DNA from: Mantamonas sphyraenae STR306 | Lineage: Eukaryota; Protista; CRuMs | Assembly: GCA_026936335.1 (NCBI GenBank) | Contig: JAPMXV010000072.1 | Coordinates: forward strand, 186,001 to 250,000 | Reading direction: 5' to 3' | Length of the DNA: 64,000 bases | Part shown: positions 39,595 through 64,000 of the stretch, piece by piece | Layout: each line of letters opens with the position of its first letter | How positions within the stretch are numbered: position 1 is the stretch's first letter | The notes under the pieces: generated by a model | The model's database searches: none | What the model was told of the DNA's origin: nothing | Seen by the model: the letters and a program-made list of their open reading frames with translations, nothing else | Position numbers and translations under genes: made by a program

Positions 39595-40405
39595 ACTTGG
39601 ACGTGGCCGGAAGAAAGCGGCTGCTGACCCTTGTCCGCGAGGGTGCTGGCGAGGAGGAGCTGCTCGAGGTGATTGGAGGGATGACGAGGGTGCGTCTGCG
39701 TGGGGAGTTGGACTTGTTCAACTCGATGGTGCGTGGGAAGGACTTGGAACAGGTTTGCAGGGCGCTGGCCTGCTTTTGGACGGGGTGTCTGGGGCAAAGG
39801 CAGTGGGTGCGTTTGGAGAGATGCTGAAGAAGAACACGACTTTGCAGGAGCTTGCGCTAGGGAGGGAGGCGCGGGATGAAGAGAACCAGGCCGCCCTGCT
39901 GAAGGGATTGGAGGACAACTGGACGTTTTGGAGGCTATCGTCTGTTGGAGCAAGCTCGGGTTTGCTACGGAAGCTGGCTGAGAACCAACGGCTGGGGGCG
40001 ACGTTCTCAGCAGCGGCAGAGGCAGGGGATGTGGAGTGGATGGAGAGGTTGAGGGAGAAGGGTGTGGATGTGAACACCAGGGGAGGGGCCAGAACGGCGT
40101 TGGAGGGAGCTGTGATGGGAGATCAGGAGTTTGTGGTGGAGGTGTTGCGGGCGTGGGGCGCGAGGCCAAGGGAGAGAACGAGGGAGCTGGTGAGGGGGAA
40201 AGGGTGGAGAAAGGCGTGGCATTGGATTGGGTGGGGTGGACAGGTGGATGAGGCGATGGAGGTGGCGTTGGTGATGAACGGGGAGGAGAGGGAGGTGATG
40301 TTTGGGTGTGGTGGGATGGAGGGGTACGCACCGACTGCACAGTGGATGACACTGCCGGATGAGGTGATGGAGAGGGTGGTTGGGTGGGTGGGGAGGGGAG
40401 GGTGA
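39591..40405 (+). pseudogene. Degenerate or short LRR-ANK-F-box-like paralog (frame break at about 39775, most LRRs missing)
   Basis: MNLDV..GELDLFNS in one frame; NTTLQELALG, ANK and the WMTLPDEVMERVV tail in another. An assembly indel cannot be excluded. Confidence 0.55.
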
Positions 40406-40454
40406 GAGAGTGGGAGGTGAATCAAGCGCAGTGGCATCCAACGTGATTGACAAG

Positions 40455-40520
40455 GTAGAGGAGTTGTTGGGTCGGTTGGTGTCGACGGTTGGTGGCGTTC
40501 ATGCTGACGGGGAAATGCAG
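40455..40520 (+). other. Putative 5'-UTR intron (duplicate at 42294-42359; analogous one at 51574-51691)
   Basis: AAG/GTAGAG..GCTGAC..TGCAG ending 10 nt before the ATG; the upstream frame that would join the CDS contains a stop. Confidence 0.55.
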
Positions 40521-40530
40521 AGTGGACGAG

Positions 40531-42244: not shown

Positions 42245-42369
42245 GAGAGTGGGAGGTGAATCAAGCGCAGTGGCATCCAACGTGATTGACAAGGTAGAGG
42301 AGTTGTTGGGTCGGTTGGTGTCGACGGTTGGTGGCGTTCATGCTGACGGGGAAATGCAGAGTGGACGAG

Positions 42370-44083: not shown

Positions 44084-44279
44084 GAGGGGGGAAGCGCTGT
44101 GGGGAGCAAGGCATCCAACAACCGTCACATTCCAACAGGAATTCGAATGTAGGTAGAGTGAAGCTGGATAGAGAACGTGCGGGATGGGGAGCGTGGCTGC
44201 AGAAGGGGAAGAATGAGAAAAGTCTGCATTCGCGCTTCGCGCTCACCCAATTTTCGACACAACGCGCAAACAAAGGACA

Positions 44280-46080: not shown

Positions 46081-46121
46081 GAGAGGGAGAGGGTGGCGAA
46101 TGCCAGCCCAAACGAAAAAGC

Positions 46122-49100
46122 ATGAGATCCCAACTCCATGCCCTCCTCCACAAGAATCAACTCCTCTTGACACGGAGACGCGCATTCATCGTGTCTCTCG
46201 TGCTGGCCCCGACGATCTTTCTCTCGATGCTTGTCCTCCTGCAACACTCGCTGCTCCTCGCGTCCACGCAACCGCAGCCCTTTGCACGCAACCCTCCCTC
46301 GTTGTCCCTGCGCAACTCAACTTCTCTGCGCTGTGTGGTCATCAATTCTCTCCTGCGCCACGATGCGAACGCGCCTTGCGTTGCCTTGGCTTTCACGCCA
46401 CAAACACCCTTTTCCGACGCCGTCGTTGCGCATATCCGCTCCTCGTACGGTCTCTTGAAAAATGAGACGCTGTCGTTCGACACGCCAGAGTCAATGGCCA
46501 TGCATATTGCGCTGCGCCCAGGCCATGTCGGCCTTGCCCTCACGCTGAACGCCACCGTGCAGGACGAAATTTCGTACGAAATCTGGTCAAACAACACGGC
46601 ATCGTTCTACGCGGCACAACTGGGTCTGGATCGCGTGCTAGAGACGTACTCACTGGACGGACAGGCTATGTTGCTAGATCTAGCGGTGCAGGAGGCTCTG
46701 ATTGCGCAGCACACGCCGGTGCGTCTGCACACAAACATTCAGGCGTTTCCCCAGCTCATCTCCAACGGGATCCAGCAAACACAGCAGTTACTGTCCGATT
46801 ACGGGGCCTTGGTCTTGTTGGCCGGCTGTATGATTTTGTATGTGGCCATTGTCAACGTCGTGGCGGACGAAAAGGCGCGTGGAATGCTTGGCCTGATGCG
46901 CAGCATGAACCTGCATGAAAGTGTCTACTGGCTGTCGTGGTTTGTCGCCCTTGTGCCTGTGGCCCTGTTGACGGCGGTTGCCCTTGTGGGGGCGGGACAC
47001 GCCATGGATGTGCCCCTTTTCACCCGCTCAGATCCCTGGGTGTTGCTGACGCTGTTTGCGTTGTTTCTGTTGTCCACCATTCCGTTTGCCTTTGTGGCAA
47101 CCAACATGCGCACCGTGCGCGGGGCAAACGTGTGTGCGCTGAGCATGGTGGGTGTGGGCGTTGTGTTGCAGGTCTATGTGCAGGCGGCGCCCCAGCTTCT
47201 GAGTGCCGGCATGCTTGCCATCAACACGTTCTACGACCCTGTCAACGCCACCATCCTGATGCGCATCGTGACGGCTCTGCTGCCACAGTTCCATCTTATT
47301 CGAGTGCTGGAAGACATCCGTCTGCAGGTTGCGGACAAGGTGGTGTACAGCACCGCCCTGAAGAAGCAGACGGTGATTCCTGGCGGGCGCTATGTGTGGG
47401 CTGACCTGTGGAAGGAGAGGACTCAAGCGTCGTGCTGCACGCTGAGCGACGGGCTGCGGCCTTCACCGTACACGTACGTTGTTCCGCCCGCGGAGGAGTC
47501 GCTTTGGCTGCTCGTGCTGGACGTTTGCCTCTACCTGATTTTGGCATGGTATCTGGGCATGGTGGTTGACTCGGGAGACGGAACGGCTCGCCCGTGGTAC
47601 CTGTGGCGTCGGGAGCGTCGATCTGACGAGACGCCTGTGGCGGGCGACTTGAGAGCAGCAAACATGGTTCGCAGCCGCCAGGAAGGGAGCATTCGCGTGC
47701 ACAAGCTGAGCAAGTCGTTCAAGAGCGTTTCCGCGGTGCGTGAGGTGACGCTCGAGATGGCGCGTGGAGAGGTGTTCTGTCTGTTGGGGCAAAACGGGGC
47801 CGGCAAGACGACCATCATCAAAATGTTGACGGGCATGGAAAAGATCAGCCACGGCTACGCACATCTGTTGGGACTGGACGTCGGGCGAGACGTGGGCAGA
47901 GTGCGAGGCCTGATTGGCATATGCCCGCAGGGCGATGTCCTGTGGAACGAACTCACCGCAGAGGAACATTTGCTGATCTTTGCTCGCTTCCGCGACGTTG
48001 AGGCCACGTGGGGTGCTGAACGCATGCGTGAGGCGCTCGAAAAGACGGGACTGTTGGAGGATGCCGGTGTGGCTGTGGGCAACTTTAGCGGTGGCATGAA
48101 ACGACGAATGTGTGTGGCCATGGCTGTGGTGGGCGATCCCGCCGTGGTGTTCCTGGACGAACCGACGGCTGGGCTGGATCCGTTGTCACGGCGCCAGCTG
48201 TGGGCATATGTACAGGAGCTGAAGGCGGAGCGAATTGTGTGTCTGACCACGCACTACCTGGAGGAGGCGGAGCTGCTGGGCGATCGGGTTGGAATTCTGT
48301 CGCAGGGGAGGCTCTGTGCACTGGGATCGCCGTCATTGTTGAAGTCTGTGTATGGGGGAGGTTTCCACGCAAAACTGCTGTGCGAAGCAGACCGAGCTGC
48401 CGAAGTCGAGAGGCTTGTGAAGCGGTTCCTGCCGTTTGCTGAGATTCTGGACCAGAGCGCAGGCAGTTTTTCTGTGTCGATTCCTGCTGGTGAGGCGGGC
48501 CAGGTACGTCGTCTGCTGCTGACGCTGGAAGAGGCCGGCGAGGCGAGTGCGGTGAAGGAGTGGGACGTCAGCACAACGACGCTGGAAGAGGTTTTCCTGC
48601 GTGTGGCGCGGCTGGAGCAAACCGTGAACCGTAACGATGGGGATCGAGGGAATGTGTGTGCGGTGTGTGGCGAGAGGCCCGCAGGGCGTGTGATGCTGTT
48701 TACGCGGAGCGGGAGCGCCGTGCGCACAGAAGGGCTTGTGTGCACGACGTGTGCGGAGGAGGAGGAAAGGGATGAGGAGGAGCAAGGCGATGGGGTGGAA
48801 GAGGAAGACACGAGGACGGAGGAGGAGGAGGAGGCTGCTTTCCTCGGGCGGGACAGCGAGGCGTTTTCAACGGACCACTTGTTTGCCAAACAAGTGCGAG
48901 CGCTGTGCATCAAGAACGCACAAGTGAAGCGCCGGGGTAACCGATGGGTGCTCGGGTGTCAGTTGCTGTTGCCTGTGCTTGTGGTGGTTGTGTCTGTGTT
49001 GATCCAGCGGGATTTGTACCGGACGGCCTCGTTCACAGGGGCGAACTGTGATTTTGGCAGCGAGTACCGCACGTCTTGTACGCCGGATGCGTTTGTGGAT

Positions 49101-51503
49101 GTACTGTTGAAGAAGGTGGTGGGGAGGTCGACGGCCATGGGATTCTGGGACAAGAGTCCACCGCCCTCTGGCTGGCACCGGGAAACACCGCCAGCAGTGG
49201 GACCTGCCTGGGACCAGTACATGGCACCATATGTCCAATCGCTCTACTTTTACGAGAATGCGACGGCGCAGGACCTTTCACACACGGTGCGAATGGAAGT
49301 TCAGGACGCGAGCACGTCTGGGCAGTGGGCAATGCTGGATCCGCTTCTCCCTCGCGTCCACTCTAGCCGGAACGACATGTCTTGGCGCTTCACGGATTGG
49401 TACCTGAAGACGACGCTGCCAGAGGTGAGTGTGGTGAGTTCGATGGCAGACGTGGAGCGGAAGATTTGGGAAGCACAAGAGGAATACGCAGCTGGAGCGG
49501 ATACCTGGTCCCAGGATGTCGGGTACCTCGGAAGCATTCGCAAGATGAGGCATGCGTTTCCGGGAGTGGGACTTGAGGTGCACGAGTGTGGTGCGGACTG
49601 TTTGAACGTGACGATCAAGACGTACTACCAGTCATTGTACTCGGGCAACCGGACGTGGGAAAATGCACGTTGGCGACTGGGAGGTTTGCAGTTGGATCCT
49701 GTGCAGAAGATGCAACCGACACAGGCGCACCTTGTGGTGCAGCAGGCTGTGTCTTGTGCATTTGGGCGGCTGGTGACTGGTCATCGATGGCTGAACATAA
49801 CCTCGTCACACAAGAGCATGCCGGGGGTCGGGTCCGAGTTTCGGCGGTCTGTGGACAAGGCAGTGCTGACGATTGCCAACCTGCTGGTGGGGCTTGGGTC
49901 GTTGAGTTTGGTGGCGACGCTTGTGGCGGGGCTGGTGAATGAGCACGAAGGCGGCCAGGTGTTGCTGATGCGCATGATGGGGATGGACATGCGCGCGCAC
50001 TGGGTCGCGACGATGGTGTCGATGGTTGTGCAGCAGATGGCAAATGGGTCTGCCATTCTTGTGCTCGGGGCGCTGTTGGACATGCGATCGATGAGCAAAG
50101 GTGGCGAGGTTGCCGCTGTGCTGTTTGTGTGGGCGTACGTGCAAGCGTGCATGTGCATGTGGCTTGCGCTGTGGTTCAAGAGGCAGCAGACGGCGATGCT
50201 GGTGACACTCGCGTTTGTGGTGCTGTCGCTTGCGCTGGGGTCTGTGATCAACGCCGCGTTCGAGTCGATGCCGCTCTGGTTGGGCATTGTGCCAACGCTT
50301 GGCTTTTTGCGTGCGCTGAACCTGGCAATGGGTGGATTGCCTGCGCGAGACGACGAGACGGTGGGCGCTGTGCTGGCGGTGCTTGTGGCTGTGGGAAGCG
50401 CACTGTTGGCGTGGGCCATGTTCCTGGAGCGAGAGCGCGTGAAGCGTGGGCCACGGTGGTGGCAGGCGTGGTGGGGATGGCGTTTGCGTGGCGAGACAGC
50501 GTACAGCGCGATGGAGATGGATGAGATGTGGGAGGGGAGCGGTGCAGTGGAGGCGCGCGGCTTGGGCAAGGTGTTTCCAGGCAGCCAGCGTGCTGCACTG
50601 GTGGATGTGGACTTGAGTGTGCGGGAGAGCGAGTGCCTGGGACTGCTGGGACCCAACGGAGCGGGCAAGAGCACGCTGATCAACATCCTGACAGGCGCAA
50701 TCGAAGCGAGTAGCGGAGTGGCCCGGGTGGGCGGGGCGGATGTGAAGAGCGAGACCGCACGGGTGCACCAACTGTTGGGCGTATGCCCTCAGTTTAACGT
50801 GTTGTGGGATAATTTGACCACAGAAGACCACTTGCTGTTGTTTGCACGGCTGAAGGGTGTCTCGAGCCGTTTTGAGAGCGCAGTGGCGCAGACGGTGTCC
50901 GCAGCGACGTTCCTGGATGGCGACCCGTACGGGCAGCGGAGCAAGGAGCTGAGCGGGGGAACGCAGCGGCGGCTGTGTCTAGCGATGGCACTGGTGTCGG
51001 ACCCGCCGGTGCTGTTTCTGGACGAACCGACCACCGGATGCGACCCGCTGAGCCGCAAGCTTGTGTGGCGCGTGATTGCCAAGGCCAGGGCGGGTAGGAG
51101 CATCGTGTTGACGACGCATTCGATGGAAGAGGCGGATGCCCTGTGCACAAAGATTGGCATTGTGGTGCGCGGACGGCTGCAGTGCGTAGGAACGCCCGTG
51201 CAGCTGAAGCGTGAATGGGGAGGCGGGCACGTGGTGTCGTTGCGGGCGCAGGATGTGGAGCAGGCGCGCGCGTATGTACGCGAGGCGCTGCCTGCGGCTG
51301 TGTTGCGCAGGGAGACGGCGGATGGTGTGTTGGAGTGGGTGATTCCCAGCGGGGAATGTGAAGCTTCCAAGCTGTTTGCGGTGTTTGGGGACATGGGCGA
51401 GGGCGGCGGGGGCGGAGGCGGAGGCATGGGGTGGACGCTGGGACACAGCAACTTGGAGGATGTGTTTGCGCGGGTTGTGGAGGACGCGGGGGAGAGTGAA
51501 TGA
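46122..51503 (+). CDS. Full-length ABCA-subfamily transporter
   Basis: Two TMD-NBD halves; LLGQNGAGKT/FSGGMKRR/LDEPTAGLDP and LLGPNGAGKS/LSGGTQRR/LDEPTTG; TTLEEVF and SNLEDVF. Confidence 0.95.
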   Translation: MRSQLHALLHKNQLLLTRRRAFIVSLVLAPTIFLSMLVLLQHSLLLASTQPQPFARNPPSLSLRNSTSLRCVVINSLLRHDANAPCVALAFTPQTPFSDAVVAHIRSSYGLLKNETLSFDTPESMAMHIALRPGHVGLALTLNATVQDEISYEIWSNNTASFYAAQLGLDRVLETYSLDGQAMLLDLAVQEALIAQHTPVRLHTNIQAFPQLISNGIQQTQQLLSDYGALVLLAGCMILYVAIVNVVADEKARGMLGLMRSMNLHESVYWLSWFVALVPVALLTAVALVGAGHAMDVPLFTRSDPWVLLTLFALFLLSTIPFAFVATNMRTVRGANVCALSMVGVGVVLQVYVQAAPQLLSAGMLAINTFYDPVNATILMRIVTALLPQFHLIRVLEDIRLQVADKVVYSTALKKQTVIPGGRYVWADLWKERTQASCCTLSDGLRPSPYTYVVPPAEESLWLLVLDVCLYLILAWYLGMVVDSGDGTARPWYLWRRERRSDETPVAGDLRAANMVRSRQEGSIRVHKLSKSFKSVSAVREVTLEMARGEVFCLLGQNGAGKTTIIKMLTGMEKISHGYAHLLGLDVGRDVGRVRGLIGICPQGDVLWNELTAEEHLLIFARFRDVEATWGAERMREALEKTGLLEDAGVAVGNFSGGMKRRMCVAMAVVGDPAVVFLDEPTAGLDPLSRRQLWAYVQELKAERIVCLTTHYLEEAELLGDRVGILSQGRLCALGSPSLLKSVYGGGFHAKLLCEADRAAEVERLVKRFLPFAEILDQSAGSFSVSIPAGEAGQVRRLLLTLEEAGEASAVKEWDVSTTTLEEVFLRVARLEQTVNRNDGDRGNVCAVCGERPAGRVMLFTRSGSAVRTEGLVCTTCAEEEERDEEEQGDGVEEEDTRTEEEEEAAFLGRDSEAFSTDHLFAKQVRALCIKNAQVKRRGNRWVLGCQLLLPVLVVVVSVLIQRDLYRTASFTGANCDFGSEYRTSCTPDAFVDVLLKKVVGRSTAMGFWDKSPPPSGWHRETPPAVGPAWDQYMAPYVQSLYFYENATAQDLSHTVRMEVQDASTSGQWAMLDPLLPRVHSSRNDMSWRFTDWYLKTTLPEVSVVSSMADVERKIWEAQEEYAAGADTWSQDVGYLGSIRKMRHAFPGVGLEVHECGADCLNVTIKTYYQSLYSGNRTWENARWRLGGLQLDPVQKMQPTQAHLVVQQAVSCAFGRLVTGHRWLNITSSHKSMPGVGSEFRRSVDKAVLTIANLLVGLGSLSLVATLVAGLVNEHEGGQVLLMRMMGMDMRAHWVATMVSMVVQQMANGSAILVLGALLDMRSMSKGGEVAAVLFVWAYVQACMCMWLALWFKRQQTAMLVTLAFVVLSLALGSVINAAFESMPLWLGIVPTLGFLRALNLAMGGLPARDDETVGAVLAVLVAVGSALLAWAMFLERERVKRGPRWWQAWWGWRLRGETAYSAMEMDEMWEGSGAVEARGLGKVFPGSQRAALVDVDLSVRESECLGLLGPNGAGKSTLINILTGAIEASSGVARVGGADVKSETARVHQLLGVCPQFNVLWDNLTTEDHLLLFARLKGVSSRFESAVAQTVSAATFLDGDPYGQRSKELSGGTQRRLCLAMALVSDPPVLFLDEPTTGCDPLSRKLVWRVIAKARAGRSIVLTTHSMEEADALCTKIGIVVRGRLQCVGTPVQLKREWGGGHVVSLRAQDVEQARAYVREALPAAVLRRETADGVLEWVIPSGECEASKLFAVFGDMGEGGGGGGGGMGWTLGHSNLEDVFARVVEDAGESE

Positions 51504-51699
51504 AGCGATCGGTGGTGGGTGCGTGAGTGCATCCAGGGTTTTGGGGATACACACAGTACAGAACATTTACAGGGTAGGGAAGGGTGGGGGTGGGGTGGGC
51601 TTCGAGACCTTGCGTGTGTGTGGGTGAGGGGAGGGAGGGGGGAAGTTGGGATGAGTGTCGCGCAGAGTTGCTGACTCACGGCAAATGGCAGCCGTGGAT

Positions 51700-53711
51700 A
51701 TGCGCCTAGACAAGTACGAATGGGCGAGAGTGTTGCAGAGTGGGGACCACGGGCGCATTGTGGATGCTTTGGAGGCTCAAGGAAGGGTGAGTTGGCGTGG
51801 GAGGGAATGGGTGAGGTTGCAAGGAGAGGGAGGGGGAGGAGGGATGGTGCAGGGTGGGGAGGACATGCGTTGACACGGTACACACAGGAGTTGGACCTCG
51901 TTTGTTTGGAGCTGGGAGGCAAGGAAGCGGTAGCTCTGGCCAAGGCGCTGGCTGGGAACGCCAGCTTGCAGAAACTGGACCTCAACCACAACAGCATCGG
52001 GGCAGAAGGAGCTGTAGCACTGGCCAGAGTGCTGGCAGAGAACACAAGCTTGCACAGACTGTCCCTCGATGACAACGGCATCGGTGCAGAAGGAGCAGCA
52101 GCACTTGTGCAGGGACTGGGTGGGAACCGCAGCTTGCAGACACTGAACCTCGGCTTGAACGACCTTGGTGCAGAAGGAGCAGCAGCACTGGCGCAGGGAC
52201 TGGGTGGGAACCGCAGCTTGCAGGTACTGGGCGTTCAGAACAACAACATCGGGGCAGAAGGCGCAGCTGCGCTGGCGCAGGCTCTGAGTATGAATTCCAG
52301 CTTGCAGAAACTGAACCTCGGAGGCAACAGCATCGGGGAGGAAGGAGTAGCAGCAGTGGCGCTGGGATTGAGTGAGAACAGCAGCTTGCAGACAGTGGAT
52401 CTCGGCTTGAACAGCGTCGGTGAAGAGGGTGCAGCAGCACTGGCGCAGGTTCTGAGAGAGAACAGCACCTTGCGGGAGCTGAATCTCGGCTTGAACAGCG
52501 TCGGTGAAGAAGGTGCAGAAGCAATTGCGCAGGGACTGAGCAGGAACTGCAGCTTGCAGACGCTGGGTCTCCAGAACAACAACATTGGGACACAAGGAGC
52601 AGCAGCGTTGGGGAGGGCGTTGTGCGAGAACTGTGGCTTGCAGACACTGAAGCTCGGTGGCAACAGGATCGATGCAAAAGGAGCAACCGCACTGGCGCGG
52701 GGACTGATTGAGAACAGCAGCTTGCAGACGCTGATCCTCTGCGCCAACAGAATCGCGGAGAAAGGAGCAGCAGCACTGGCGCAGGGGCTGGGAGAAAACA
52801 ATAGGTTGCAGACGCTGGACCTCAGCCGCAACAATGTCGGGAACAAGGGAGCGGCAAAACTGGCCATGGGCCTGTACAAGAACAGTAGCTTGCAGAAACT
52901 GGACCTTGTTGGCAACAGCATCGGAGCAGAAGGAGCAGCAGCGCTGGCGCAGGCTCTGGGAGAGAACAAGAGTTTGCAGGCACTTTATCTCGCCTACAAC
53001 AGAATCGGGGATGAGGGAACAGTAGAACTGGCGCAGGCACTGGATGAGGCAAGCAGCTTGCAGACATTGGACCTCTGCAAGAACTCCGTCGGGGCGGAAG
53101 GAGCAGCGGCACTGGCAAAGGCACTGAGGACGAGCAGCAACCTGCAGACACTGAACATAAGCTCCAACAGCATCAGGGCAGATGGTTTGGCAGCATTGGT
53201 GCAGGCCATGGGAAGCAATCGTTCGTGCTGGAAGGTTGAGGGCGTTTACAGTGACTTGGTGCAGTTGCTGGTGGAGAAAAACATGGAGAAGCATGTGGAG
53301 TTTGTGGAGTGTGGGGATGTGGAGAAGATGAGAGAGTTGAGGGAGTGGGGGGTGCCTGTGGATACGTTTGCAGGGGATGGAGGGGAGGAGACTGCGTTGG
53401 AGCGAGCCGTGCAGCGAAGGGATGAGGGGATTGTGGAGGTGTTGCGGGGGTGGGGTGTGAAGCAGAGGGTTGAAACGGTGGAGATGGTGAGGGAGGAAGG
53501 GTGGAGGAAGGCGTGGCATTGGATTGGGTGGGGTGGACAGGTGGATGAGGCGATGGAGGTGGCGTTGGTGATGAATGGGGAGGAGAGGGAGGTGATGTTT
53601 GAGTGTGGAGGGATGGAGGCGTATGTGGAGGAGGGAGGGTGGGAAGGGTGGGTGACACTGCCGGATGAGGTGATGGAGAGGGTGGTGGAGTGGGTGGGGA
53701 GGGGAGGGTGA
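51700..53711 (+). CDS. LRR(15)-ANK-F-box-like protein, copy D; intron 51787-51887
   Basis: Exon 1 WARVLQSGDH is homologous to copies A-C; same intron position; tail WVTLPDEVMERVV. Confidence 0.85.
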
Positions 53712-53728: not shown

Positions 53729-55111
53729 TCATTCGAGGCGTTGGCGTTTGGAGGAGGAGGAGGAGGAGGAGGAGGAGGAAGGGTCTTTGCGCTTGGGAAG
53801 GGTGAAGGAGGGGATGGGGTAGGCGTTGACGAGTGCGTAGGTAGTGGGGCGGGTGTTGATGTGGGGTGTGATGCGGTCGATGAGGGTGTGGAGGAGGGTG
53901 TGCAGTGTGGCGTCGCTGGGTTGGGGTTTGTCGAGCCAGGCGATCTTGAGGGAGAGGGAGGTGACGCCGCGGGTGAGGGTGGAGCTGATGGCACCAACCA
54001 CCTGCTGGTAGGTGAGCTGTGGCCTGAGGAGGCGGACAAAGAAGGCCAGGTCGACAGGCGGCATGCCAACGTTGCCCAGCGCCAGGATGATGTGTCGCAC
54101 AAGGGACAGCTTGCTGCCGTTGTTGATCAGTTCAAGCAGTGTCTGGTGCTCGTGTGTGTGCTGATGGCGAGGGTGCTTGGCTGCGCGTGCCTTCATGTGT
54201 GCCAGCAGCGTCTGGAACTCCCGCGCCGTGCAGCTGCCTCGCTCGTCGCCGGCTTTGCTCCAGCCACTGCGCACAGACTCGGGATGCCACTTGTCCACCT
54301 CGGTGGTGGTGAGGTGGTGGTCGTAGTCGCATTTGGTCCAGTGTGGATCGCTGTTGTTGCCAGCAGGGCGTCGTGCTTCCTGCAGCCACAGTTGGGTCTG
54401 CTTGTGCTCCTTCCAGGTGGTGGGATGGGCCCTGTCGCCAAGAGTGTCCATTTCTGTCATGAGCAGGTGGAGGAGGGCGTAGTTGGGGTCGCCGTGGTCG
54501 TGTGGCTCCTCCAGCCAGCACACCTTCAACCCAGCCTTTGTCACACCCATGGCCAGACCAGCGTTCTTGATGATGGCAAGGCTGCACGCCTGTTGATCCA
54601 CATCATGGCCGAGAAGGGTGAGGCACATGGCCATGTCGCCTTGGGAGAGGGGAAGGTTGCCCACAGCGAGCAGGATCTGTCGGATCAGCGTGGTCAGGGT
54701 GCCATGGCAGACCACAACCCGCGCCTGCAGCGTCATGAGGTCTGGGATGTTGTCGATGGGATGCTCGTTGGCCAGGGTGTGCATGTGCTTCAGCAGTGCC
54801 GTGTGCTCCTTCTTGTTGCTGTGCATGCGCTCGCTCTTGCGCCAGGACTTCCAGCCACTGCGCACAACGCCGTCTGGCAGTCCATCCCCCGCCGCCATCT
54901 TCTCCTCCTCTGTTGGCTCGGGCAGAGCAAGCTCGGCGATGTCAAGGGCATTGACGGCGTCGACGGTGGTGGGGCGGGTGGTGATGTGGGGTGTGATGCG
55001 GTCGATGAGGGTGTTAAGGAGGGTGTGCAGTGTGGCGTCGCTGGGTTGGGGGTTGTCGAGCCAGGCGATCTTGAGGGAGAGGGAGGGTGCGATTGAACTT
55101 GACAAGTACGT
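53729..55111 (-). CDS. Unknown HTH-like tandem-module protein, copy 1 (partial B module plus one A+B unit; start uncertain)
   Basis: Homologous to 58576-62164 and 62470-64000. Homology begins abruptly at SLSLKIAW; first in-frame ATG at 54898; ends PKRKDP(S)nKRQRLE. Confidence 0.7.
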   Translation of the reverse strand, partial: TYLSSSIAPSLSLKIAWLDNPQPSDATLHTLLNTLIDRITPHITTRPTTVDAVNALDIAELALPEPTEEEKMAAGDGLPDGVVRSGWKSWRKSERMHSNKKEHTALLKHMHTLANEHPIDNIPDLMTLQARVVVCHGTLTTLIRQILLAVGNLPLSQGDMAMCLTLLGHDVDQQACSLAIIKNAGLAMGVTKAGLKVCWLEEPHDHGDPNYALLHLLMTEMDTLGDRAHPTTWKEHKQTQLWLQEARRPAGNNSDPHWTKCDYDHHLTTTEVDKWHPESVRSGWSKAGDERGSCTAREFQTLLAHMKARAAKHPRHQHTHEHQTLLELINNGSKLSLVRHIILALGNVGMPPVDLAFFVRLLRPQLTYQQVVGAISSTLTRGVTSLSLKIAWLDKPQPSDATLHTLLHTLIDRITPHINTRPTTYALVNAYPIPSFTLPKRKDPSSSSSSSSSSKRQRLE

Positions 55112-55152
55112 CTGTCATGGTGTGGAGGGAAGCAGAGAACAAACCATGGTGT

Positions 55153-58051
55153 TCAAGACAACAATTGTGCATTTTCATCCAGCTCTCGCACCTCTGCCTC
55201 CACAAATGGCAAGGCCATGAACCCCTGCATCAGCTCGCCGTAGTACCCACGATGGTTTTTTCCATGCACCACAAACACGTTCTTGTCCGCTGTCCACCAA
55301 CCACCGAGCTTGCCCAGCAGTTGATCCTTCAAGTCACCTGTGGGCGCCTTGACGCTGCTCAACCCAAACACCACATGCACCTTGCCTCCAGGACCAGCCA
55401 GGGGTTGAAACACCTCCTCGATCAGCTTCTCTGTGTCTCCTTTGCCCGATTTCCAGCCAGTGTTCCTCGTGGCAGATGAAGAGTGGTTGGTGCCCATCAC
55501 CTTGTCGTACTCCTCCTTGATCATCCCAAGGTCCACCTTGTCGTTCGCGTGCTCTCCATACTTGCTGAACTTGCACTGAATGCACTCCACCACGACGCCA
55601 TCCTCGGTGGGATGCACTGAAATCACATCCGCGAAGGGTGCCTTCTCTGCGTTGAGAAAGTGGATGCTGTGGTGCAGTCCATCCGTGTCCTGCTCTGCAT
55701 GCTTCTGCACGATGCCAGCCACTTCATCCACATGGGTGGGGAAGCGCTGTTTCAGATCCACCAGCTGTGAGCCAGTCACACGCGTGCTGTACTTGATGTT
55801 GCGAAGTGGAGGACTGCAAATCGCTCCACGATGCCATTGTGAGCCACGCATCGTGCTGTGCGATGGTGGGCACTCCACCAGCGCCTGTGCCCGCAGGCGG
55901 TGGTAGTTCTGTGCGAATTGCTCGTACTTTTCCCAGTGATTCACTGGATCTAGGCGATCCATCCAGCGAAGCAGGATGCTGTCATCACCCATTTCTTCCT
56001 CCAAACGCAGAGGAATGGGCACAACTTGTCCACCATGCACAATCACCAGTCCACAGTCCATGTGCTCCTGCACTGTCGAGTCCCCAATCACATCCGTCAG
56101 CTGCACAGGCTCCTTGAACAGGTTCATGCGGATCAGCTCCTTGGCCACCTCGCCAGGAAACACCTTGGAGTTGATGTGATTCTTCACCCGCTCCAATGTC
56201 GCATTTAGATCCTTGGCGATGAGACCCACCTCCCAGTGCTTCTTGGCGTCGTACTCTTTGGCAATAATCTCCACAGCACGTGGGACACCAAACACACGGC
56301 GCAGGGTGTTGACCAGCACACTGTCATGGCCTTGTTCTTGAGCCTTTTCCAGTGGAATGTTCACAAAGCCAAGCACGGCATGCAGGGATTCAGCCAGACT
56401 GAGTGTGGGCACAGCCAGTGAGTAGGCCCTGTACGTGGATGTGCGCTGCAGTGCACCAAGCAGATACAGGTCTCGAGTGCCAGCCACAGCAACCACAGCT
56501 CGGCACCGGTGTTCTTGGCCATTGTGGGTGCCACGCAGATTGTTTGTGGATGGCATGATGCCAGCAACAGAGCGAATCACCTGCTCCAATGTCTCGCGTT
56601 CGGATGCGTTGTTGTCCACAATCTTTTGCACTTCGTCAAAGCCCACATAGAGAAGGACAGGCCTGCCGTTGTTGTGTTTCTGCGCGTGTTGGATGATCAG
56701 CCTGGCGGCATCCACGGGTTCTGGCAGACTGATCAGTGACCTTTCCAAGGTTTTGACGTGGTCTGGATGCAGCCGCCCATCGTTTCCGTTGTCAACCGCG
56801 TACTGGTGCAACATGCGCACACCAAGGCCTCGGTCACTCCAGGTGCGTTCAATCTCTGGAGAGTTCCTGTTGTTGAGCGTGAGGAGCACGGGGACGACAT
56901 GAAGGTGTGCCAAGTCACGCCTCCTTGCCACGTCCTCCAACGTGTTGACCAGTTCCATGAGCATGCGAGTCTTGCCTGACCCTGGCATGCCTGCTAACGA
57001 GTACAGCCACGTGTCGGCCCGGTTTTGAACCTTGCGGAGAAGCTGAGACTGAACCTCCTGGCTGAAGCTGTCCAGTGCATCCTGCCGATTCTGAAGTGGG
57101 ATCTGCATGGCCAGTTCCGTGGACTCCACGTCTCCCAATGGCGTGTTCTTCTTGCTGAGATCGAAAAAGGGTTCCTTGCCCAACAATTCGGCAAATTGCT
57201 CCACGGACGTCAACTCCACCCGCTCCACTGCGTGTTTGTCAATGCACAGAGTGTCAGCGACGTCATGGACGGCCAATACAAACGCTGGAACCTACCATGA
57301 GGTGAAACAAGTGCAGCGGCCTCCCACAAGCCTGTGGGGAGTGGGGCAGGTGTCAGCAAAATGGCGCGGCGCGAAGAATTGTGGGTGTCAGGAACTCACG
57401 CTCATGGTGCGCCTGGGCCTTGTGCTGTTCCGTTCTCGCGTCATCCACCCGACGTTGGTACACCGCAACAGCATCCTCATCCCCCTTTCTCTTTGCATCT
57501 AGCAGCAACGCCTCTGCGTTTGCGGCTTCCGCCTTTGCCACTTCCGCCTCTGCCTTTGCCACTTCCACCTCTGCCTTTGCCACTTCCTTCTCTACCTTTG
57601 CCACTTCCTTCTCCTTCTCATCCACAAGACTCTGCAAGGCCTCCTTCTCTCCTTGTGCGCTCAGTCGCAGCTGTTGGCGAGCTTGGCCAAGTTCTGCGGA
57701 CAACGACTCTACACGGTCGCGCAACCTCTCCAGGCGCTCCTCACGCTTGTTCAGCTTGCTTCTGGCCTCCAAAAACAACTGCTCAGCACTGATGGTGACG
57801 GTGGACATGCTGCAGCGCTGCACGACAGCGGCTGTGCCGTTGAGCCATGGTGATGATGAGGACGACGTGTTCCTGCCCTGCCACGACCGGGTCGCATGCA
57901 AACTGGCACCCATAACCACGTCGTGTCGAGGACGCATCGTGCTATGATGAGCAGTGACGTGCCCCAGCGTGGTTCGCACTCGTGGAGTGCCTGTGCGAAG
58001 GGTTCGGCACAGCAAGGAGCCTCCTCGATTGGACACCCTGCGTGCGAACAT
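55153..58051 (-). CDS. Crinkler-like P-loop NTPase plus PD-(D/E)xK nuclease with coiled coil and mitochondrial-type leader; exons 58051-57400, 57331-57296, 57227-55153
   Basis: Walker A GMPGSGKT; Walker B LYVGFDEVQ; FGVPRAVE; nuclease NAEKAPFADV..ECIQCK. Two 68-nt introns, each with a GCTGAC branch, join three exons in frame. Confidence 0.75.
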
Positions 58052-58575
58052 TTGGCTTGGATGGGGCAGCATGCTTCGCCCATCCACATAATTCAACCGT
58101 GCGTGACGTGTGGGAGACCATGGGTTCTGCGTAATGCATTGCTTGTCCCATGCACCAGGGACGACTTTCTGTGCGCCCTGTGGCACAACAAGGCACACAG
58201 TCCAGAATGGGGGCATTCGTCAGGTGATGAGCGTGATAGGGACGTCAGCGTGTCTTTTGCAAGGTGCCAGTGCATGGTCAAATGCGTCGGATGGCCAGGA
58301 CGAGGACGAGGAGTGCAGGATGGACACACACACCAACAACAACGTTGCGACGGTGATGAGCAACAGCGCAAACAACACCAACACCAGCAGCACCACCAAC
58401 TTGACGGCGATGTCGATGCTGAGCAGGGGACAATCCAAGATGAACACCTCAGTGTCTGTGGGGTCGGCAAAAGGGCTTCGGAGCGGCGGAGCGAGGCCCT
58501 GTGCCAAGAAGGGGAACGGAATGTGATGTGTGAAGGGCAGCAAATGATGGAGTGGACCGGAAGGAAGAAGGGGGT

Positions 58576-61500
58576 TCATTCGAGGCGCTGGCGTTTGGAG
58601 GAGGAGGAGGAGGAGGAGGAGGAAGAGGAGGAGGAAGAGGAAGGGTCTTTGCGCTTGGGAAGGGTGAAGGCGGGGATGGGGCAGGCGTTGACGAGTGCGG
58701 TGGTGGTGGGGCGGGTGGTGATGTGGGGTGTGATGCGGTCGATGAGGGTGTGGAGGAGAGTGTGCAGTGTGGCGTCGCTGGGTTGTGGGTTATCGAGCCA
58801 GGCGATCTTGAGGGAGAGGGAGGTAACACCGCGGGTTAGAGAGTGACTGATGGCAGTGGAGGCATCGTTGTAGTTGAGGTGTGGTCTGAGGAGGCGGACA
58901 AAGAAGGCCAGGTCGACAGGCGGCACGCCAACGTTGCCCAGCGCCAGGATGATGTGTCGCACCAGGGACATCAGGCTGCCGTTGTTGATCAACTCACGCA
59001 GTGCCTGGTGCTCGTGTGCGTACTGATGGCGAGGGTGCTGGGCTGCGCGTGCCTTCATGTGTGCCAGCAGCGTTTGGAACTCCCGCGACGTGCTGCTGCC
59101 ACGCTCGTCGCTGTTGGCTCTGCTCCAGCCACTGCGCACAGACTCAGGGTGCCACTTCTCGCCACCAGCGGTGTTAAGGTGGAGGTCGTAGTCGCATTGT
59201 GTCCAGTGTGGGTCGCCGTCGTTGGCAGCAGGGCGTTGTGCTCCCTGCAGCCACAGCTGGGTCTGCTTGTGCTCCTTCCAGGTGCTGGGATGGGGCCTGT
59301 CGCCGAGTGTGTCCATTTCTGTCATGAGGAGGTGGAGGAGGGCGTAGTTGGGGTCGCCGTGGTCGTGTGGCTCCTCCAGCCAGCACACCTTCAACCCAGC
59401 CTTTGTCACACCCATGGCCAGACCAGCGTGGTCAATGGCAAGGGTGCACGTGCGTTGATCCATTTCACGGCCGAGAAGGGTGAGGCAGAAGGTCATGTCT
59501 CCCTGGGAGAGGGGAATGTTGCCGAGTGCAAGCTGAATCTGTCGGACCAGCGTCAGCAGGGTGCCATGGCAGACCACAACACGCGCCTGCAGGGTCACGA
59601 GGTCGGGGATGTCGTCGATGGGATGCTGTTTGACCAGAGTGTGAATGTGGTTCAGCAGTGCCGTGTACTCCTTCTTGTTGCTGTGCATGCGCTCGCTCTT
59701 GCGCCAGCGAGTCCAGCCACTGCGCACAACGCCATCTGGCAGTCCATCCTCAGCGGCCATATTCTCCTCCTCTGTGGGCTCGGGCAGAACAAGCTCGGGG
59801 ATGTCGAGGTTGCTGACGGCGTCGATGGTAGTGGGACGGGTGGTGATGTGGGCTGTGATCCGGTCGATGAGGGTGTGGAGGAGGGTGTGCAGTGTGGCGT
59901 CGCTGGGTTTGGGTTTGTCGATCCAGGCGATCTTGAGGGAGAGGGAGGTGACGCCGCGGTTGAGGGTGAAGCTGATGGCACTTTGCACCTGCTGGTAGGT
60001 GAGGCGTGGTCTGAGGAGGCGGACAAAGAAGGCCAGGTCGACAGGCGGAAGGCCAACGTTGCCCAGCGCCAGGATGATGTGTCGCAGAAGGGACAGCTGG
60101 CTACCGGTGTTGATCAACTCACGCAGTGCCTGGTGCTCGTGTGTGTGCTGGTGGCGAGAGTGCTTGGCTGCGCGTGCCTTCATGTGTGCCAGCAGCGTCT
60201 GGAACTCCCGCGCCGTGCAGCTGCCACGCTCGTCGCTGGGATTTCCCTTGTTCCAGCCACTGCGAATAGACACAGGATGCCACTTGTCCACCTTGGTGGT
60301 GGTGAGGTGGTGGTCGTAGTCGCATTGTGTCCAATGTGGGTCGCTGTCGTTGTCAGCAGGGCGTCGTGCTTCCTGCAGCAATAGCTGGGTCTGCTCGTGT
60401 TCCTTCCAGCTGGTGGGATAGGGCCTGTTGCCGAGAGTGTCCATCTCTGTCATGAGCAGGTGGAGGAGGGCGTAGTTGGTGTCGCCGTAGTCGTGTGGCT
60501 CCTCCAGCCAGCACACCTTCAACCCATCTTTTGTCACACCCATGGCCAGACCAGCGTTCTTGATGGCAGTTCTGCACGCCTGTTGATCCACATCACGGCC
60601 GAGAAGGGTGAGAAACAAGGCCATGTCGCCCTGGGAGAGGGGAATATTGCCCAGAGCGAGCAGAATCTGTCGGACAAGCGTCAGCAGGGTGCCATGGCAG
60701 ACCACAACACGCGCCTGCAGGGTCATGATGTCGGGGATGTTGTCGATGGGATGCTGGTTGGCCAGAGTGTGCATGTGGTTCAGCAGTGCCGTGTGCTCCT
60801 TCTTGTTGCTGTGGCTGCGATCACAGTGGTCACCACCAACCGCCCACCCTTTACGCACAACGCCATCTGGCAACTTGTTCTTCTTGTCCTCGCCTGATTT
60901 CTTCCGTGCGCCGGTGTCTCCGTTCTTGGCCCTCCTTGCCAGTGTGCTCGACGTTCCTGTCTCGGTGCCACTGTCAGCCGTGACCCTGCGCCTGCGCTGT
61001 CCGCTGCCTTTCATCTTTTGTGGACCGGTGAGTCGGCTGGTGTGGCACCTGCGTCGTTGTGCGTGGCCTCTACTTGTGCGTCTCAGCTGCCAATCGTCCG
61101 TGTCCTCCTGCTCCATGTCGTCTGCGTCGCCGTCACCGTCGTCTTGCGGCATGTACTCCTCATACATGGCTTCAGCAGTATCTGCAAAGAAGAGTGGGCC
61201 GTGAGTTTCAAACTCGTCGTCCACGTGCTGCTGGGTTGTGTCGTTTGCCTCGCCGTCTTCTTCGTACGCCTCCATCCATGAGCTGGTCATCCACTCTGGG
61301 TTGCTGGTGATTGACCGTGGTTCACGGTGGCCAAAGTTCAGGAACATCAGGTCTTCCACCTCGCCAGTGTCATGTGTGTGTGTGTCCTGGTCTGCGTCTT
61401 CGTCGCTGTCTCCAGTCTGCCGTGTGGCCTGGTGGGAGGAGGACGACGATGTGGTGGTGGATGTGGTCCGTGTGATGCCTACAAAGGCAGGGCTGATGCG

Positions 61501-62164
61501 TTTGGGGACGCGGTTGTGGTTTGTGGTGGGTTGAGCAGGCGGACGGGGCAACGGAGTCTGAGCGAAGTGCACCTGGGCGGTTTGTCGCGGCTGAGGAGGA
61601 GGCGGAGGAGGGTAGGCGTAGTGTGGATGGTGATGGCCGTATGCGGAGTGCTGCTGCGGGTGGGTGTTGACAGGGACCCAGATGATGGGTAGTTGTGGGT
61701 GCTGGTACGGGTTTTGTACGCCTTGGACGGACAGCATGTTCGGAAACGGCTGGGCAGCCATGGGAGGGACCATGTACGCGTAGCTGTGGGGGAGATGGGA
61801 GGTGCAGGGCGGGGTGGGAACGGTGAGCGGAAGGCGGAATGGACGCCGTCAGGGCAGAAGCGGGGAGAAAGGAGGCTGGAACGAGCAGAGAGGGAAAGAG
61901 GAGAAGATTGGCAGACGGGGAAACTGGCAACGGGGAGGGCAGTGACAGGGGAGACGGGATCGGAGTAGAGCGGAGAAGGCAGCGGCGGTGGTGATGGGGA
62001 AGTGGAGATGCAGGACAGGAGTGCAGTGAAGCGACGGAGGCATGGAGGAGGCAAAGAAGTGGGAGGAGCGGGCAGTCAGAAAACGGAGTGGAAGGCAGAA
62101 CGCACGCTGGGTAGGTGTTGGGTGTGTGTTGTTGCTTCGGAGTGCTTGAGTAGTCTTTGTCCAT
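58576..62164 (-). CDS. Unknown HTH-like tandem-module protein, copy 2 (complete: low-complexity N-terminus plus A-B-A-B); intron 61784-62105
   Basis: 59-nt exon 1 (MDKDYS..) with GTGCGT..CTGAC..CACAG splices in frame; internal period 1131 nt (377 aa); bipartite NLS-like C-terminus. Confidence 0.78.
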
Positions 62165-62265
62165 GATGGTAGTGGTGGTACTGGAGTGTATGTGGATTGT
62201 GTTGGACTGGTGGAGGGTGTTCTGGGTGTTGGTGATACTTTGGTTGCAGGCGGATGTGGGCTGCA

Positions 62266-62439
62266 CAGGTGGACGAGGCTAAAGGGACGGCGTTGGTGAT
62301 GAATGGGGAGGAGGGGGAGGCAATATTTGGGTGTGGTGGGATGGAGGAGTATGTGGAGGAGAGAGGATGGGAAGGGTGGGTGACACTGCCGAATGAGGTG
62401 ATGGAGAGGGTGGTTGGGTGGCTGGGGAGGGGAAGGTGA
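62266..62439 (+). pseudogene. Orphan F-box-like tail fragment of an LRR-ANK gene (closest to copy D)
   Basis: QVDEAKGTALVMNGEE..YVEERGWEGWVTLPNEVMERVVGWLGR with no upstream ANK or LRR. Confidence 0.8.
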
Positions 62440-62469
62440 GTGCGAAGGGTGTGGGAATGAAAGGGAGGT

Positions 62470-64000
62470 TCATTCGAGGCGTTGGCGTTTGGAGGAGGAG
62501 GAGGAGGAGGAGGAGGAGGAGGAGGAGGAGGAGGAAGGGTCTTTGCGCTTGGGAAGGGTGAAAGAGGGGATGGGGAAGGTGTTGACGAGTGCAGGGGTGG
62601 TGGGGCGTGTGGTGACGTGGGGTGTGATGCGGTCGATGAGGGTGTGCAGGAGGGTGTACAGCGTGGCGTCGCTGGGTTTGGGTTTGTCGAGCCAGGCGAT
62701 CTTGAGCGAGAGGGAGGTGACGCCGCGGGTGAGGGTGTCGCTGATGGCAGGTTGCAACTGCTTGTAGGTGAGGCGTGGCCTGAGGAGGCGGACAAAGAAG
62801 GCCAAGTCGACAGGCGGCACGCCCACGTTGCCCAGCGCCAGGATGATGTGTCGCACCAGGGACATCTTGCTGCCGTTGTTGATCAGCTCACGCAGTGCAT
62901 GGTGCTCGTGTGCGTGCCGATGGCGAGGGTGCTTGGCTGCGCGTGCCTTCATGTGTGCCAGCAGCGTCTGGAACTCCCGCGCCGTGCAGCTGCCTCGCTC
63001 GTCGTTGGGATTGTGCGTTGCCCAGCCACTGCGCACAGACTCAGGATGCCACTTGTACACCTTGGTGGTGGTGAGGAGGTGGTCGTAGTCGCATTGTGTC
63101 CAGTGTGGGTCGCTGTCGTTGTCAGCAGGGCGTCGTGCTCCCTGCAGCCACAGCTGAGTTTTCTCGTGCTCCTTCCAGGTGGTGGGATGGGTTCTGTTGC
63201 CGAGAGTGTCCATCTCTGTCATGAGGAGGTGGAGGAGGGCGTAGTTGGGGTCGCCGTGGTCGTGTGGCTCCTCCAGCCAGCACACCTTCAACCCAGCCTT
63301 TGTCACACCTACGGCCAGACCAGCGTGGAGGATAGCATGGCTGCACGCATGTTGATCCATCTCAAGGCCAAGAAGGGTGAGGCAGAGGGCCATGTCGCCC
63401 TTTGAGAGGGGAACGTTGCCCAGAGCGAGCTGAATCTGTCGGATCAGCGTGTTCAGGGTGCCATGGCAGACCACAACACGCGCCTGCTGGGTCATGAGGT
63501 CGGGGAGGTTATCGATGGGATGCTCGTTGGCCAGAGTGTGCATGTGGTTGAGCAGTGCCGTGTGCTCCTTCTTGTTGCTGTGGCTGCGCTCGCTCTTGCG
63601 CCACTGCGTCCAGCCACTGCGCACAACGCCATCTGGCAGTCCATCCTCCACGGCCATCCTCTCCTCCTCCGTGGGCTCAGGAAGAACAAGCTCGGGGGTG
63701 TAAAGGGCGTTGACGGCGTCGGTGGTGGTGGGGCGGGTGGTGATGTGGGGTGTGATGCGGTCGATGAGGATGTGAAGGAGGGTGTGCAGTGTGGCGTCGC
63801 TGGGTTGGGGGTTGTCGAGCCAGGCGATCTTGAGGGAAAGGGAGGTGACGCCACGGGAGAGGGTGTTCTTGATGGCATTTTGCACCTGCTCGTAGGTGAG
63901 GCGTGGTCTGAGGAGGCGGACAAAGAAGGCCAGGTCGACAGGCGGCACGCCAACGTTGCCCAGCGCCAGGATGATGTGTCGCACAAGGGACTGCAGGCTG
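62470..64000 (-). CDS. Unknown HTH-like tandem-module protein, copy 3 (runs off the window end)
   Basis: Same modules (..B-A-B) and same C-terminus as copies 1 and 2. Confidence 0.78.
   Translation of the reverse strand, partial: SLQSLVRHIILALGNVGVPPVDLAFFVRLLRPRLTYEQVQNAIKNTLSRGVTSLSLKIAWLDNPQPSDATLHTLLHILIDRITPHITTRPTTTDAVNALYTPELVLPEPTEEERMAVEDGLPDGVVRSGWTQWRKSERSHSNKKEHTALLNHMHTLANEHPIDNLPDLMTQQARVVVCHGTLNTLIRQIQLALGNVPLSKGDMALCLTLLGLEMDQHACSHAILHAGLAVGVTKAGLKVCWLEEPHDHGDPNYALLHLLMTEMDTLGNRTHPTTWKEHEKTQLWLQGARRPADNDSDPHWTQCDYDHLLTTTKVYKWHPESVRSGWATHNPNDERGSCTAREFQTLLAHMKARAAKHPRHRHAHEHHALRELINNGSKMSLVRHIILALGNVGVPPVDLAFFVRLLRPRLTYKQLQPAISDTLTRGVTSLSLKIAWLDKPKPSDATLYTLLHTLIDRITPHVTTRPTTPALVNTFPIPSFTLPKRKDPSSSSSSSSSSSSSSSKRQRLE

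What the first reader, a model, noticed from the sequence alone, without database searches (positions are those of the whole stretch)
53729..64000. Unrecognised protein family built from tandem HTH-like modules with hypervariable putative recognition helices (candidate modular DNA-reading system)
Seen: three minus-strand copies are made of a 377-aa unit that is itself two homologous ~190-aa halves. A: VRSGW..KEHTALLNHM..TLVRQILLALGNIPLSQGDMALFLTLLG..AI..GVTKAGLKVCWLEEP. B: VRSGW..REFQTLLAHM..SLVRHIILALGNVGVPPVDLAFFVRLLR..AI..GVTSLSLKIAWLDKP. Units are highly similar, with variation concentrated in two windows. One is the helix after the turn (B: YQQVVGAISS, YQQVQSAISF, YNDASTAISH, YEQVQNAIKN, YKQLQPAISD; A: QQACSLAIIK, QQACRTAIK, QRTCTLAID, QHACSHAIL). 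The other is the loop after SGW (B: SKAGD, NKGNPSD, SRANSD, ATHNPND). The complete copy has a Pro/Gln/His-rich then acidic disordered N-terminus. Established: the pattern helix / P-L-S-x-x-D helix / turn / helix / strand is that of winged HTH domains, where helix 3 reads bases. Inference: these are diversifying nucleic-acid-binding arrays, loosely analogous to KRAB-ZNF or TALE arrays, possibly directed at viruses or transposons. I recognise no named family.
Basis: partly seen in the sequence, partly recalled or inferred. Interest (0 to 1): 0.9.

Follow-up and report, generated by a model that had tools for sequence, protein, structure and literature searches.

The report
Telomere-capping family of diversifying winged-helix proteins
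Almost every chromosome end of a deep-branching flagellate starts with a copy of the same previously undescribed gene, whose protein has four helical modules that differ between copies mainly on one exposed helix face, which suggests (but does not prove) a large, shuffled repertoire of DNA-reading proteins.

Summary
Observation confirmed and extended. The genome matches Mantamonas sphyraenae (inferred from size, contig count, GC, telomere repeat). The gene (about 1,065 aa in one open frame; A-B-A-B modules; acidic then basic N-terminus; C-terminal bipartite NLS pattern) has roughly 150-190 copies. It lies at 68 or more of 78 left ends and 30 of 31 located right telomeres, starting 0.66-0.98 kb from the located right telomeres and reading inward. 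No homologue was found in any library searched. Across 56 units the scaffold is conserved (pN/pS 0.40). Three patches are hypervariable at matching positions in A and B, including one exposed helix face. Copies are heavily recombined: 55 of 56 units have distinct patch combinations. Diversifying selection survives most recombination-aware controls. An AlphaFold model (pLDDT 64) gives a three-helix core whose best structural neighbours are mostly winged-helix domains, but only at Z 3-5, with the wing unresolved. DNA binding, expression and targets are untested. Best reading: a nuclear repertoire of sequence-specific DNA readers (0.55), like PRDM9, KRAB-ZNF or DUX4 but a member of none. The scan noted this family in many other windows of this genome.

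The parts
58576..61773 (-). Complete gene copy, 1065 aa in one open frame: P/Q/H-rich (aa 1-100), acidic (101-230), basic (231-300), modules A1-B1-A2-B2, C-terminal NLS pattern
   Evidence: 147 scored N-terminal matches at 76-86% identity
60406..60879 (-). Module A1
59821..60288 (-). Module B1 (modelled: helices 26-41, 45-61, 64-74, 82-92, 98-110, 130-150; wHTH-like core about 60-130)
59278..59748 (-). Module A2
58696..59160 (-). Module B2
59968..59997 (-). Hypervariable helix of B1 (putative recognition helix); equivalents at about 60559-60585 (A1), 59431-59457 (A2), 58843-58872 (B2)
58576..58656 (-). Bipartite NLS-like tail: KRK, variable poly-Ser spacer (9-22 aa across copies), KRQR; homology between copies ends within a few nt after the stop
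   Evidence: 147 exact matches of the stop-codon motif genome-wide
61774..62256 (-). Conserved 5' region, shared by telomere-adjacent and inner copies
62257..62469 (-). Junction segment derived from the reverse complement of an LRR-gene 3' end; same junction in at least 29 tandem inner copies
62470..64000 (-). Telomere-adjacent copy (3' part: tail of B1, A2 63175-63645, B2 62590-63057); starts outside the window at G000:C72:251670
53729..55086 (-). 5'-truncated copy (tail of B1, A 54413-54886, B 53834-54295, NLS pattern); its stop is 17 nt from the stop of a convergent LRR gene
55153..57276 (-). Neighbour: P-loop NTPase plus probable C-terminal REase, Crinkler/RHS (CR)-like; about 10 copies, all within ~12 kb of a module-gene copy
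   Evidence: weak AAA/NB-ARC hits; REase assignment from motif and PMC5289972 (inferred)
51720..53711 (+). Neighbour: RNI-like LRR gene, convergent with the truncated copy

Best explanation
An orphan family of nuclear, transcription-factor-like proteins that read DNA sequence with four winged-helix-type modules. It sits as the outermost gene of nearly every chromosome arm, where ectopic recombination shuffles its specificity patches. SHOWN: copy number, position and orientation; conserved scaffold; three hypervariable patches per module at matching sites in A and B; fine-scale mosaicism; NLS pattern and acidic/basic N-terminus in the sequence. LIKELY (weak structural support): each module has a wHTH-like core with the variable helix as helix 3. 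INFERRED: helix 3 reads bases in the major groove, while the N-end of helix 1 and the loop after SGW touch the backbone or minor groove. A and B may pair as an intramolecular pseudo-dimer through their flanking helices, so one protein reads up to four sub-sites. The disordered N-terminus would recruit chromatin or transcription machinery, since there is no enzyme domain. Selection for new specificities implies a moving target, most plausibly invading DNA (viruses or mobile elements) or a selfish conflict among chromosome ends.
For: Occupancy and uniform orientation. Framework pN/pS 0.40 against variable-face pN 0.38-0.47 and background pS 0.15. Third codon positions often stay fixed while positions 1-2 vary. 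A sites homologous to B's variable sites have pos1+2 diversity 0.47 against 0.07 in neighbouring codons (p 1e-6). 10 codons have entropy above 2.4 bits against 0-2 expected under neutral coalescent models with no or moderate rate variation. M2a vs M1a 2dL 326 and 296 exceed all 10 recombination-only controls, 18-178. Helical period 94 degrees on the exposed face. Residues at selected sites are 69% Q/N/H/K/R/D/S/T and about 1% aromatic, closer to base-reading helices than to protein-binding paratopes (own knowledge). About 30 of the top 50 VIA neighbours are wHTH domains (NsrR, Cdc6-WH, F-93, BrxR, MarR, Fur, FOX, SAMD1-WH, H1), aligned to model residues ~60-130; FUR appears again in the Atlas. 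B modules carry net positive charge. KRK-x9-22-KRQR tail in all 30 copies parsed.
Against: Best Z is only 5.1, below the typical background of 7-8. Foldseek E-values are 0.3 or worse. The wing region is low-confidence and modelled without strands. There is no sequence-level wHTH hit. A modules are near neutral in charge. Pro and Gly are common at one selected helix position (column 305). wHTH folds also serve protein-protein binding (cullin WHB, MAGE). The strongest rate-variation models reproduce part or all of the entropy tail if every codon is taken as neutral. No RNA data were found. The genome looks poor in retroelements (one RVT_1 hit), which weakens a KRAB-ZNF-style anti-retrotransposon target.
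Confidence: 0.55

Rival explanations
1. Intracellular protein-recognition receptors or adaptors: tandem WH-like modules (MAGE-like WH-A/WH-B) whose variable face binds viral or parasite proteins in the nucleus, working with neighbouring LRR, HECT and CR-type conflict genes.
For: Same selection pattern fits any ligand. WH domains that bind proteins are among the structural neighbours (cullin WHB, Apaf-1). Neighbours include LRR, HECT and CR-like genes. A modules are not basic.
Against: Selected residues are polar or basic with almost no aromatics. The variable helix is the one that aligns with the helix-3 region of DNA-binding wHTHs. A basic linker and TF-like N-terminus are present. No effector or ubiquitin-ligase domain is in the protein.
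Confidence: 0.2
2. A selfish or domesticated chromosome-end element (HeT-A- or Y'-like): a ~3.9-kb unit that caps ends, with the ORF acting as a Gag-like or end-binding protein and diversifying in a conflict among ends or with the host.
For: Present at nearly all ends, 5' end distal, in head-to-tail arrays, the orientation of telomeric retroelements. Homology stops within a few nt of the stop codon and is joined to 13 different flank classes in 29 loci. 5'-truncated copies exist.
Against: No RT, nuclease, helicase or Gag zinc knuckle in the ORF. No poly(A) tail or terminal repeat was seen. Only one RVT_1 hit in the genome. At least 29 tandem junctions share one breakpoint, as expected from unequal crossing-over rather than independent retrotransposition. 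Many flanks are intact convergent genes with short intergenic gaps, which alone could sharpen the boundary.
Confidence: 0.15
3. An ordinary subtelomeric expansion with relaxed constraint on surface residues; the variable patches are neutral.
For: Heavy recombination inflates tree-based tests. pS is also raised at the variable codons. Strong rate heterogeneity can produce some high-entropy codons.
Against: Other exposed helices are nearly invariant (helix-2 entropy 0.1-0.3 bits). The same positions vary in A and B, which are 62% diverged. Interleaved codons are conserved. Diversity at the variable sites is three times the four-fold-site level.
Confidence: 0.07
4. A diversity-generating-retroelement-like mutagenesis creates the patches.
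For: Many variable codons look like NNY with a fixed third base.
Against: Third-position adenines next to the patches are stable (for example CAA codons). Variation is not confined to adenines. No template repeat or adjacent RT was seen.
Confidence: 0.03

Closest known systems
DUX4 / D4Z4 subtelomeric arrays (PMC13558733)
   Same: Single-exon ORF in a 3-4 kb subtelomeric repeat unit, tandem HTH-class domains, transcription-factor layout, some positively selected codons
   Different: Homeodomains with a C-terminal activation domain, on one or a few chromosome ends, homogenised copies. Here there is no homeodomain match, nearly all ends carry a copy, and almost every copy has a different variable helix.
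PRDM9 and KRAB zinc-finger arrays (PMC6116924)
   Same: Tandem modules with a conserved scaffold, positive selection at helix positions spaced 3-4 apart, shuffling by unequal crossover and gene conversion, variable module number
   Different: C2H2 fingers of 28 aa with KRAB/SET effector domains. Here the modules are ~150 aa, all-helical/wHTH-like, with no recognised effector domain and no shown DNA target.
Candida albicans TLO genes (PMC4335505)
   Same: Lineage-specific subtelomeric expansion of a nuclear transcriptional protein, spread by subtelomeric recombination
   Different: TLOs are Med2 subunits, 14 copies, with no DNA-binding array; this family has about ten times more copies and focal diversification.
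Winged-helix superfamily (Rrf2/NsrR, MarR, Fur, forkhead, H15, SAMD1-WH; double-wHTH E2F7/8 and MAGE from own knowledge)
   Same: Three-helix core of matching topology in the model; the A-B pairing resembles double-WH proteins
   Different: No sequence similarity; wing not resolved; two extra N-terminal helices and one C-terminal helix per module.
Telomeric elements HeT-A/TART, yeast Y', fungal telomere-linked helicases (own knowledge; PMC5537684 and PMC1635262 seen as abstracts)
   Same: Outermost unit of chromosome ends, head-to-tail, 5' end distal
   Different: No RT, Gag or helicase domain; TTAGGG telomeres are intact; tandem junctions point to recombination.

Membership tests
Winged HTH domain | Three-helix bundle with HTH (H2-turn-H3) | tested here: inconclusive
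   Helices 64-74, 82-92, 98-110 at pLDDT 70-79; ~30 of 50 top neighbours are wHTH but Z is 3-5.1
Winged HTH domain | C-terminal beta-hairpin wing | tested here: inconclusive
   Residues 112-127 have pLDDT below 50 and no strands
Winged HTH domain | Sequence match to a known wHTH family | tested here: not met
   Pfam, PDB, PHROGs, NCBIfam blank
Winged HTH domain | Helix 3 contacts DNA bases | not testable with these tools
   Exposed, variable, polar face is consistent; no binding data
Linker histone H15 domain | PF00538 match | tested here: not met
   No Pfam hit in members; genome search blank but its control did not ring; H1 is only rank 31, Z 3.2
KRAB-ZNF / PRDM9 | C2H2 zinc fingers plus KRAB or PR/SET domain | tested here: not met
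   No such Pfam domains
KRAB-ZNF / PRDM9 | Positive selection on helix surface residues with concerted evolution | tested here: met
DUX4 / D4Z4 | Double homeodomain | tested here: not met
   No homeodomain hit except one member at E 0.063 to HTH_NDX
DUX4 / D4Z4 | Single-frame ORF in a subtelomeric 3-4 kb repeat | tested here: met
   3.9-kb unit
TALE | 33-35 aa near-identical repeats with a two-residue variable site | tested here: not met
   Modules are ~150 aa with three variable patches
Telomeric non-LTR retroelement (HeT-A/TART type) | Head-to-tail at chromosome ends, 5' end distal | tested here: met
Telomeric non-LTR retroelement (HeT-A/TART type) | Gag and/or RT ORF, poly(A) 3' end, independent junctions | tested here: not met
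Diversity-generating retroelement | Adenine-specific variation with a template repeat and RT | tested here: not met
   a genome-wide template search was not done

The most novel reading that the evidence does not exclude
A new class of re-targetable DNA readers built from winged-helix modules, with a residue-to-base code in helix 3. One or more is placed at every telomere so that subtelomeric recombination continually generates new specificities, as a heritable anti-viral or anti-element surveillance library or a chromosome-end conflict system. In a minority of loci a two-module unit sits directly behind a CR-type NTPase-nuclease gene, which might couple reading to cutting.
Probability: 0.3. 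Interest if true: 0.93.

Novelty: new variant of a known kind. Interest (0 to 1): 0.78.

Why it matters
Diversifying DNA-reading arrays are known from zinc fingers (PRDM9, KRAB-ZNF) and TALEs. A winged-helix version in CRuMs, a lineage near the base of Amorphea, would be an independent invention and a possible new programmable DNA-binding scaffold with several hundred natural variants for deriving a code. Whatever it binds, a gene that occupies nearly every chromosome end, makes up roughly 2-3% of the genome (my estimate) and is under focal diversifying selection points to an unrecognised conflict. It is absent from protein databases, perhaps because repeats were masked before gene prediction (PMC10492846; inference).

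Tried and rejected
No homologues found: word-index searches with the unit, the module alignment and the full protein; hmmsearch over 1.84 billion representatives (zero hits); PDB sequences; Pfam, PHROGs, NCBIfam; ESM Atlas features; metagenome and viral contigs; exact look-up. Single-sequence AlphaFold failed (pLDDT 35). Foldseek against PDB and BFVD gave nothing significant. The antisense ORFs are not the gene: stops occur in 30-56 of 56 units. My tree-based M2a test is inflated by recombination, so I rely on the tree-free tests. DGR-type mutagenesis and autonomous retrotransposition were considered and are not supported. The possible splice link between the CR-like gene and the truncated copy was not joined or searched as a joined protein, and the CR-like gene and its upstream ORF were left unjoined.
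Full report
SOURCE. The window is G000:C72:186001-250000 of a 25,061,354-base eukaryotic assembly in 78 contigs with TTAGGG telomeres. Size, contig count, GC (59%) and telomere repeat match the Mantamonas sphyraenae assembly (25.06 Mb, 78 contigs, 59.19% GC, 59 contigs with both telomeres and 14 with one; PMC10492846). The identification is inferred from these figures.

OBSERVATION. All three minus-strand copies, the 377-aa unit and the quoted variants are real. A and B align at 38% identity, E 2e-25. The complete copy (58576-61773) has a P/Q/H-rich stretch, an acidic stretch (37 D/E in 130 aa), a basic stretch (22 K/R in 70 aa), four modules, and a tail KRK-(poly-Ser)-KRQR. The tail fits the bipartite NLS pattern, with spacers of 9-22 aa in 30 copies. 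The antisense ORFs are broken in most or all units, so the minus frame is the gene.

GENOMIC ANATOMY (new). The N-terminal region gives 147 scored matches from 189 candidates, the stop-codon motif 147 exact matches, and the module profile 748 candidates. Copies lie in the first ~5 kb of at least 68 of 78 left ends, all on +, mostly starting at 0.8-0.95 kb. Of 31 right telomeres located, 27 have a minus-strand start 0.66-0.98 kb from the repeat and three more have modules at the expected place. The gene is therefore normally the outermost gene and reads inward. Inner tandem copies repeat at about 3.9 kb and share one junction made of an LRR-gene tail plus the 5' region in at least 29 places, the signature of unequal crossing-over. 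Homology between copies ends within a few bases after the stop. Flanks fall into 13 classes among 29 loci, often intact convergent genes such as LRR, aldehyde dehydrogenase, kinase and HECT genes. Module number varies: open frames run from about 400 to 3224 aa.

EVOLUTION. In 56 units from 30 loci the framework has pS 0.149 and pN 0.059. Variation concentrates in three patches per module at homologous positions: the loop after SGW, the N-end of the first core helix, and positions i, i+3/4, i+7/8 of the third core helix. Entropy there has a 94-degree period and points 160 degrees away from the hydrophobic face. Codon positions 1-2 vary while position 3 often stays fixed. Sites picked in B predict the variable sites in A (diversity 0.47 against 0.07 in neighbours and 0.14 at four-fold sites; p about 1e-6). 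My M2a fit gives omega 4.5-7 on 4-10% of codons, 2dL 326 and 296. Recombination alone gave 18-178 in ten simulations, on somewhat shorter trees, so that test is inflated, though the observed values exceed the controls. In tree-free simulations, 10 codons exceed 2.4 bits against 0-2 expected without or with moderate rate variation, and 7-17 under the strongest rate-variation models if every codon were neutral, which it is not. Linkage decays within 30-100 bp, segments are uncorrelated, units 1 and 2 are as alike as copies from different ends, and 55 of 56 units carry a distinct patch combination. The part of the N-terminus available is weakly constrained (pN/pS 0.74, 14 copies).

FOLD. No sequence relative exists in any library searched. 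AlphaFold2 on a 117-row A+B alignment gave pLDDT 63.6, pTM 0.64: two N-terminal helices, a three-helix core (64-110), an unresolved segment (112-127) and a C-terminal helix. Foldseek found nothing significant. The exhaustive VIA search peaked at Z 5.1 (NsrR, rmsd 3.0, 74 residues), below the usual background. However, about 30 of the 50 rows are winged-helix domains by my knowledge of those families, and they align to the same residues ~60-130. I read this as a probable wHTH-like core, not a proven one. An earlier agent (s1-578101) judged the fold unsupported; I find weak, class-level support.

MECHANISM. The best reading (0.55) is a repertoire of nuclear, sequence-specific DNA readers. Helix 3 would read bases and the two other patches would touch adjacent DNA. 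A-B may act as a single-chain pseudo-dimer, the disordered N-terminus would recruit partners, and subtelomeric recombination supplies new combinations. Residue use at the selected sites (69% Q/N/H/K/R/D/S/T, about 1% aromatic) favours nucleic acid over protein ligands. Binding, expression and target are all untested; no RNA run was available. The genome has only one RVT_1 match, so retrotransposons are a less likely target than viruses or a conflict among ends (inference). Rivals: protein-recognition receptor (0.2), selfish or domesticated telomeric element (0.15), neutral surface variation (0.07), DGR-like mutagenesis (0.03).

NEIGHBOURS. A CR (Crinkler/RHS)-like NTPase-nuclease gene (55153-57276; architecture per PMC5289972) precedes the truncated copy by about 70 nt. 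The same order is seen by coordinates at C12, C17, C30 and C34, but the junction DNA itself is not conserved. A splice link is possible at this locus. I left the joined model out: it was neither built nor searched.

COMPARISON AND NOVELTY. It works, by inference, like PRDM9 or KRAB-ZNF arrays (PMC6116924) and is laid out like DUX4/D4Z4 (PMC13558733) or the Candida TLO genes (PMC4335505), but it fails the defining-domain test for each. A paper search for a selected winged-helix subtelomeric family in protists found nothing. I class it as a new variant of a known kind: an orphan family with an unusual one-per-telomere placement. Interest 0.78; the most novel reading (a coded wHTH reader library) has probability about 0.3.

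LIMITS. Counts from genome searches are lower bounds.

Noticed in passing
window 55153-57276 and 57353-58216 (-): CR (Crinkler/RHS)-like NTPase-nuclease gene with an upstream coiled-coil ORF in another frame; about 10 copies (49-87% identity), each close to a module-gene copy. Left unjoined.
   Followed up: partly
window 55086-55200; G000 C12, C17, C30, C34: CR-like gene followed closely by a 5'-truncated A-B unit at five loci; a GT...AG stretch here could link them by splicing, but the junction DNA is not conserved and no RNA was available.
   Followed up: partly
G000:C3:7371-7718 (-): The only RVT_1 match in the genome (963-aa frame, probably TERT, unverified) is itself subtelomeric and convergent with a module-gene copy whose stop is at C3:6743.
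   Followed up: no
window 39591-53711 (+): Expanded RNI-like LRR family with a conserved non-LRR C-terminal region; its 3' tail forms the shared junction of the tandem module genes.
   Followed up: partly
window 1-53700: Strong positive GC skew; most long genes lie on the + strand, reading toward the telomere, so the module gene is often convergent with the last ordinary gene.
   Followed up: no
G000:C29:76744-104644: A + array followed by a - array of module genes, with open frames of 1902-3224 aa; either a long inverted end structure or an assembly artefact.
   Followed up: no
run X5 (biofilm metagenome): Low-depth contigs at roughly 85-95% identity to the gene: a related Mantamonas population in an independent study.
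   Followed up: no
window 2-2935 (+): Protein with 15.5 tandem 43-aa TPR-like repeats (129-bp period, 91% matches), resembling the sensor end of an NB-ARC/TPR protein.
   Followed up: no
L018: The two A modules of one gene are identical, indicating a very recent intragenic duplication or conversion.
   Followed up: no
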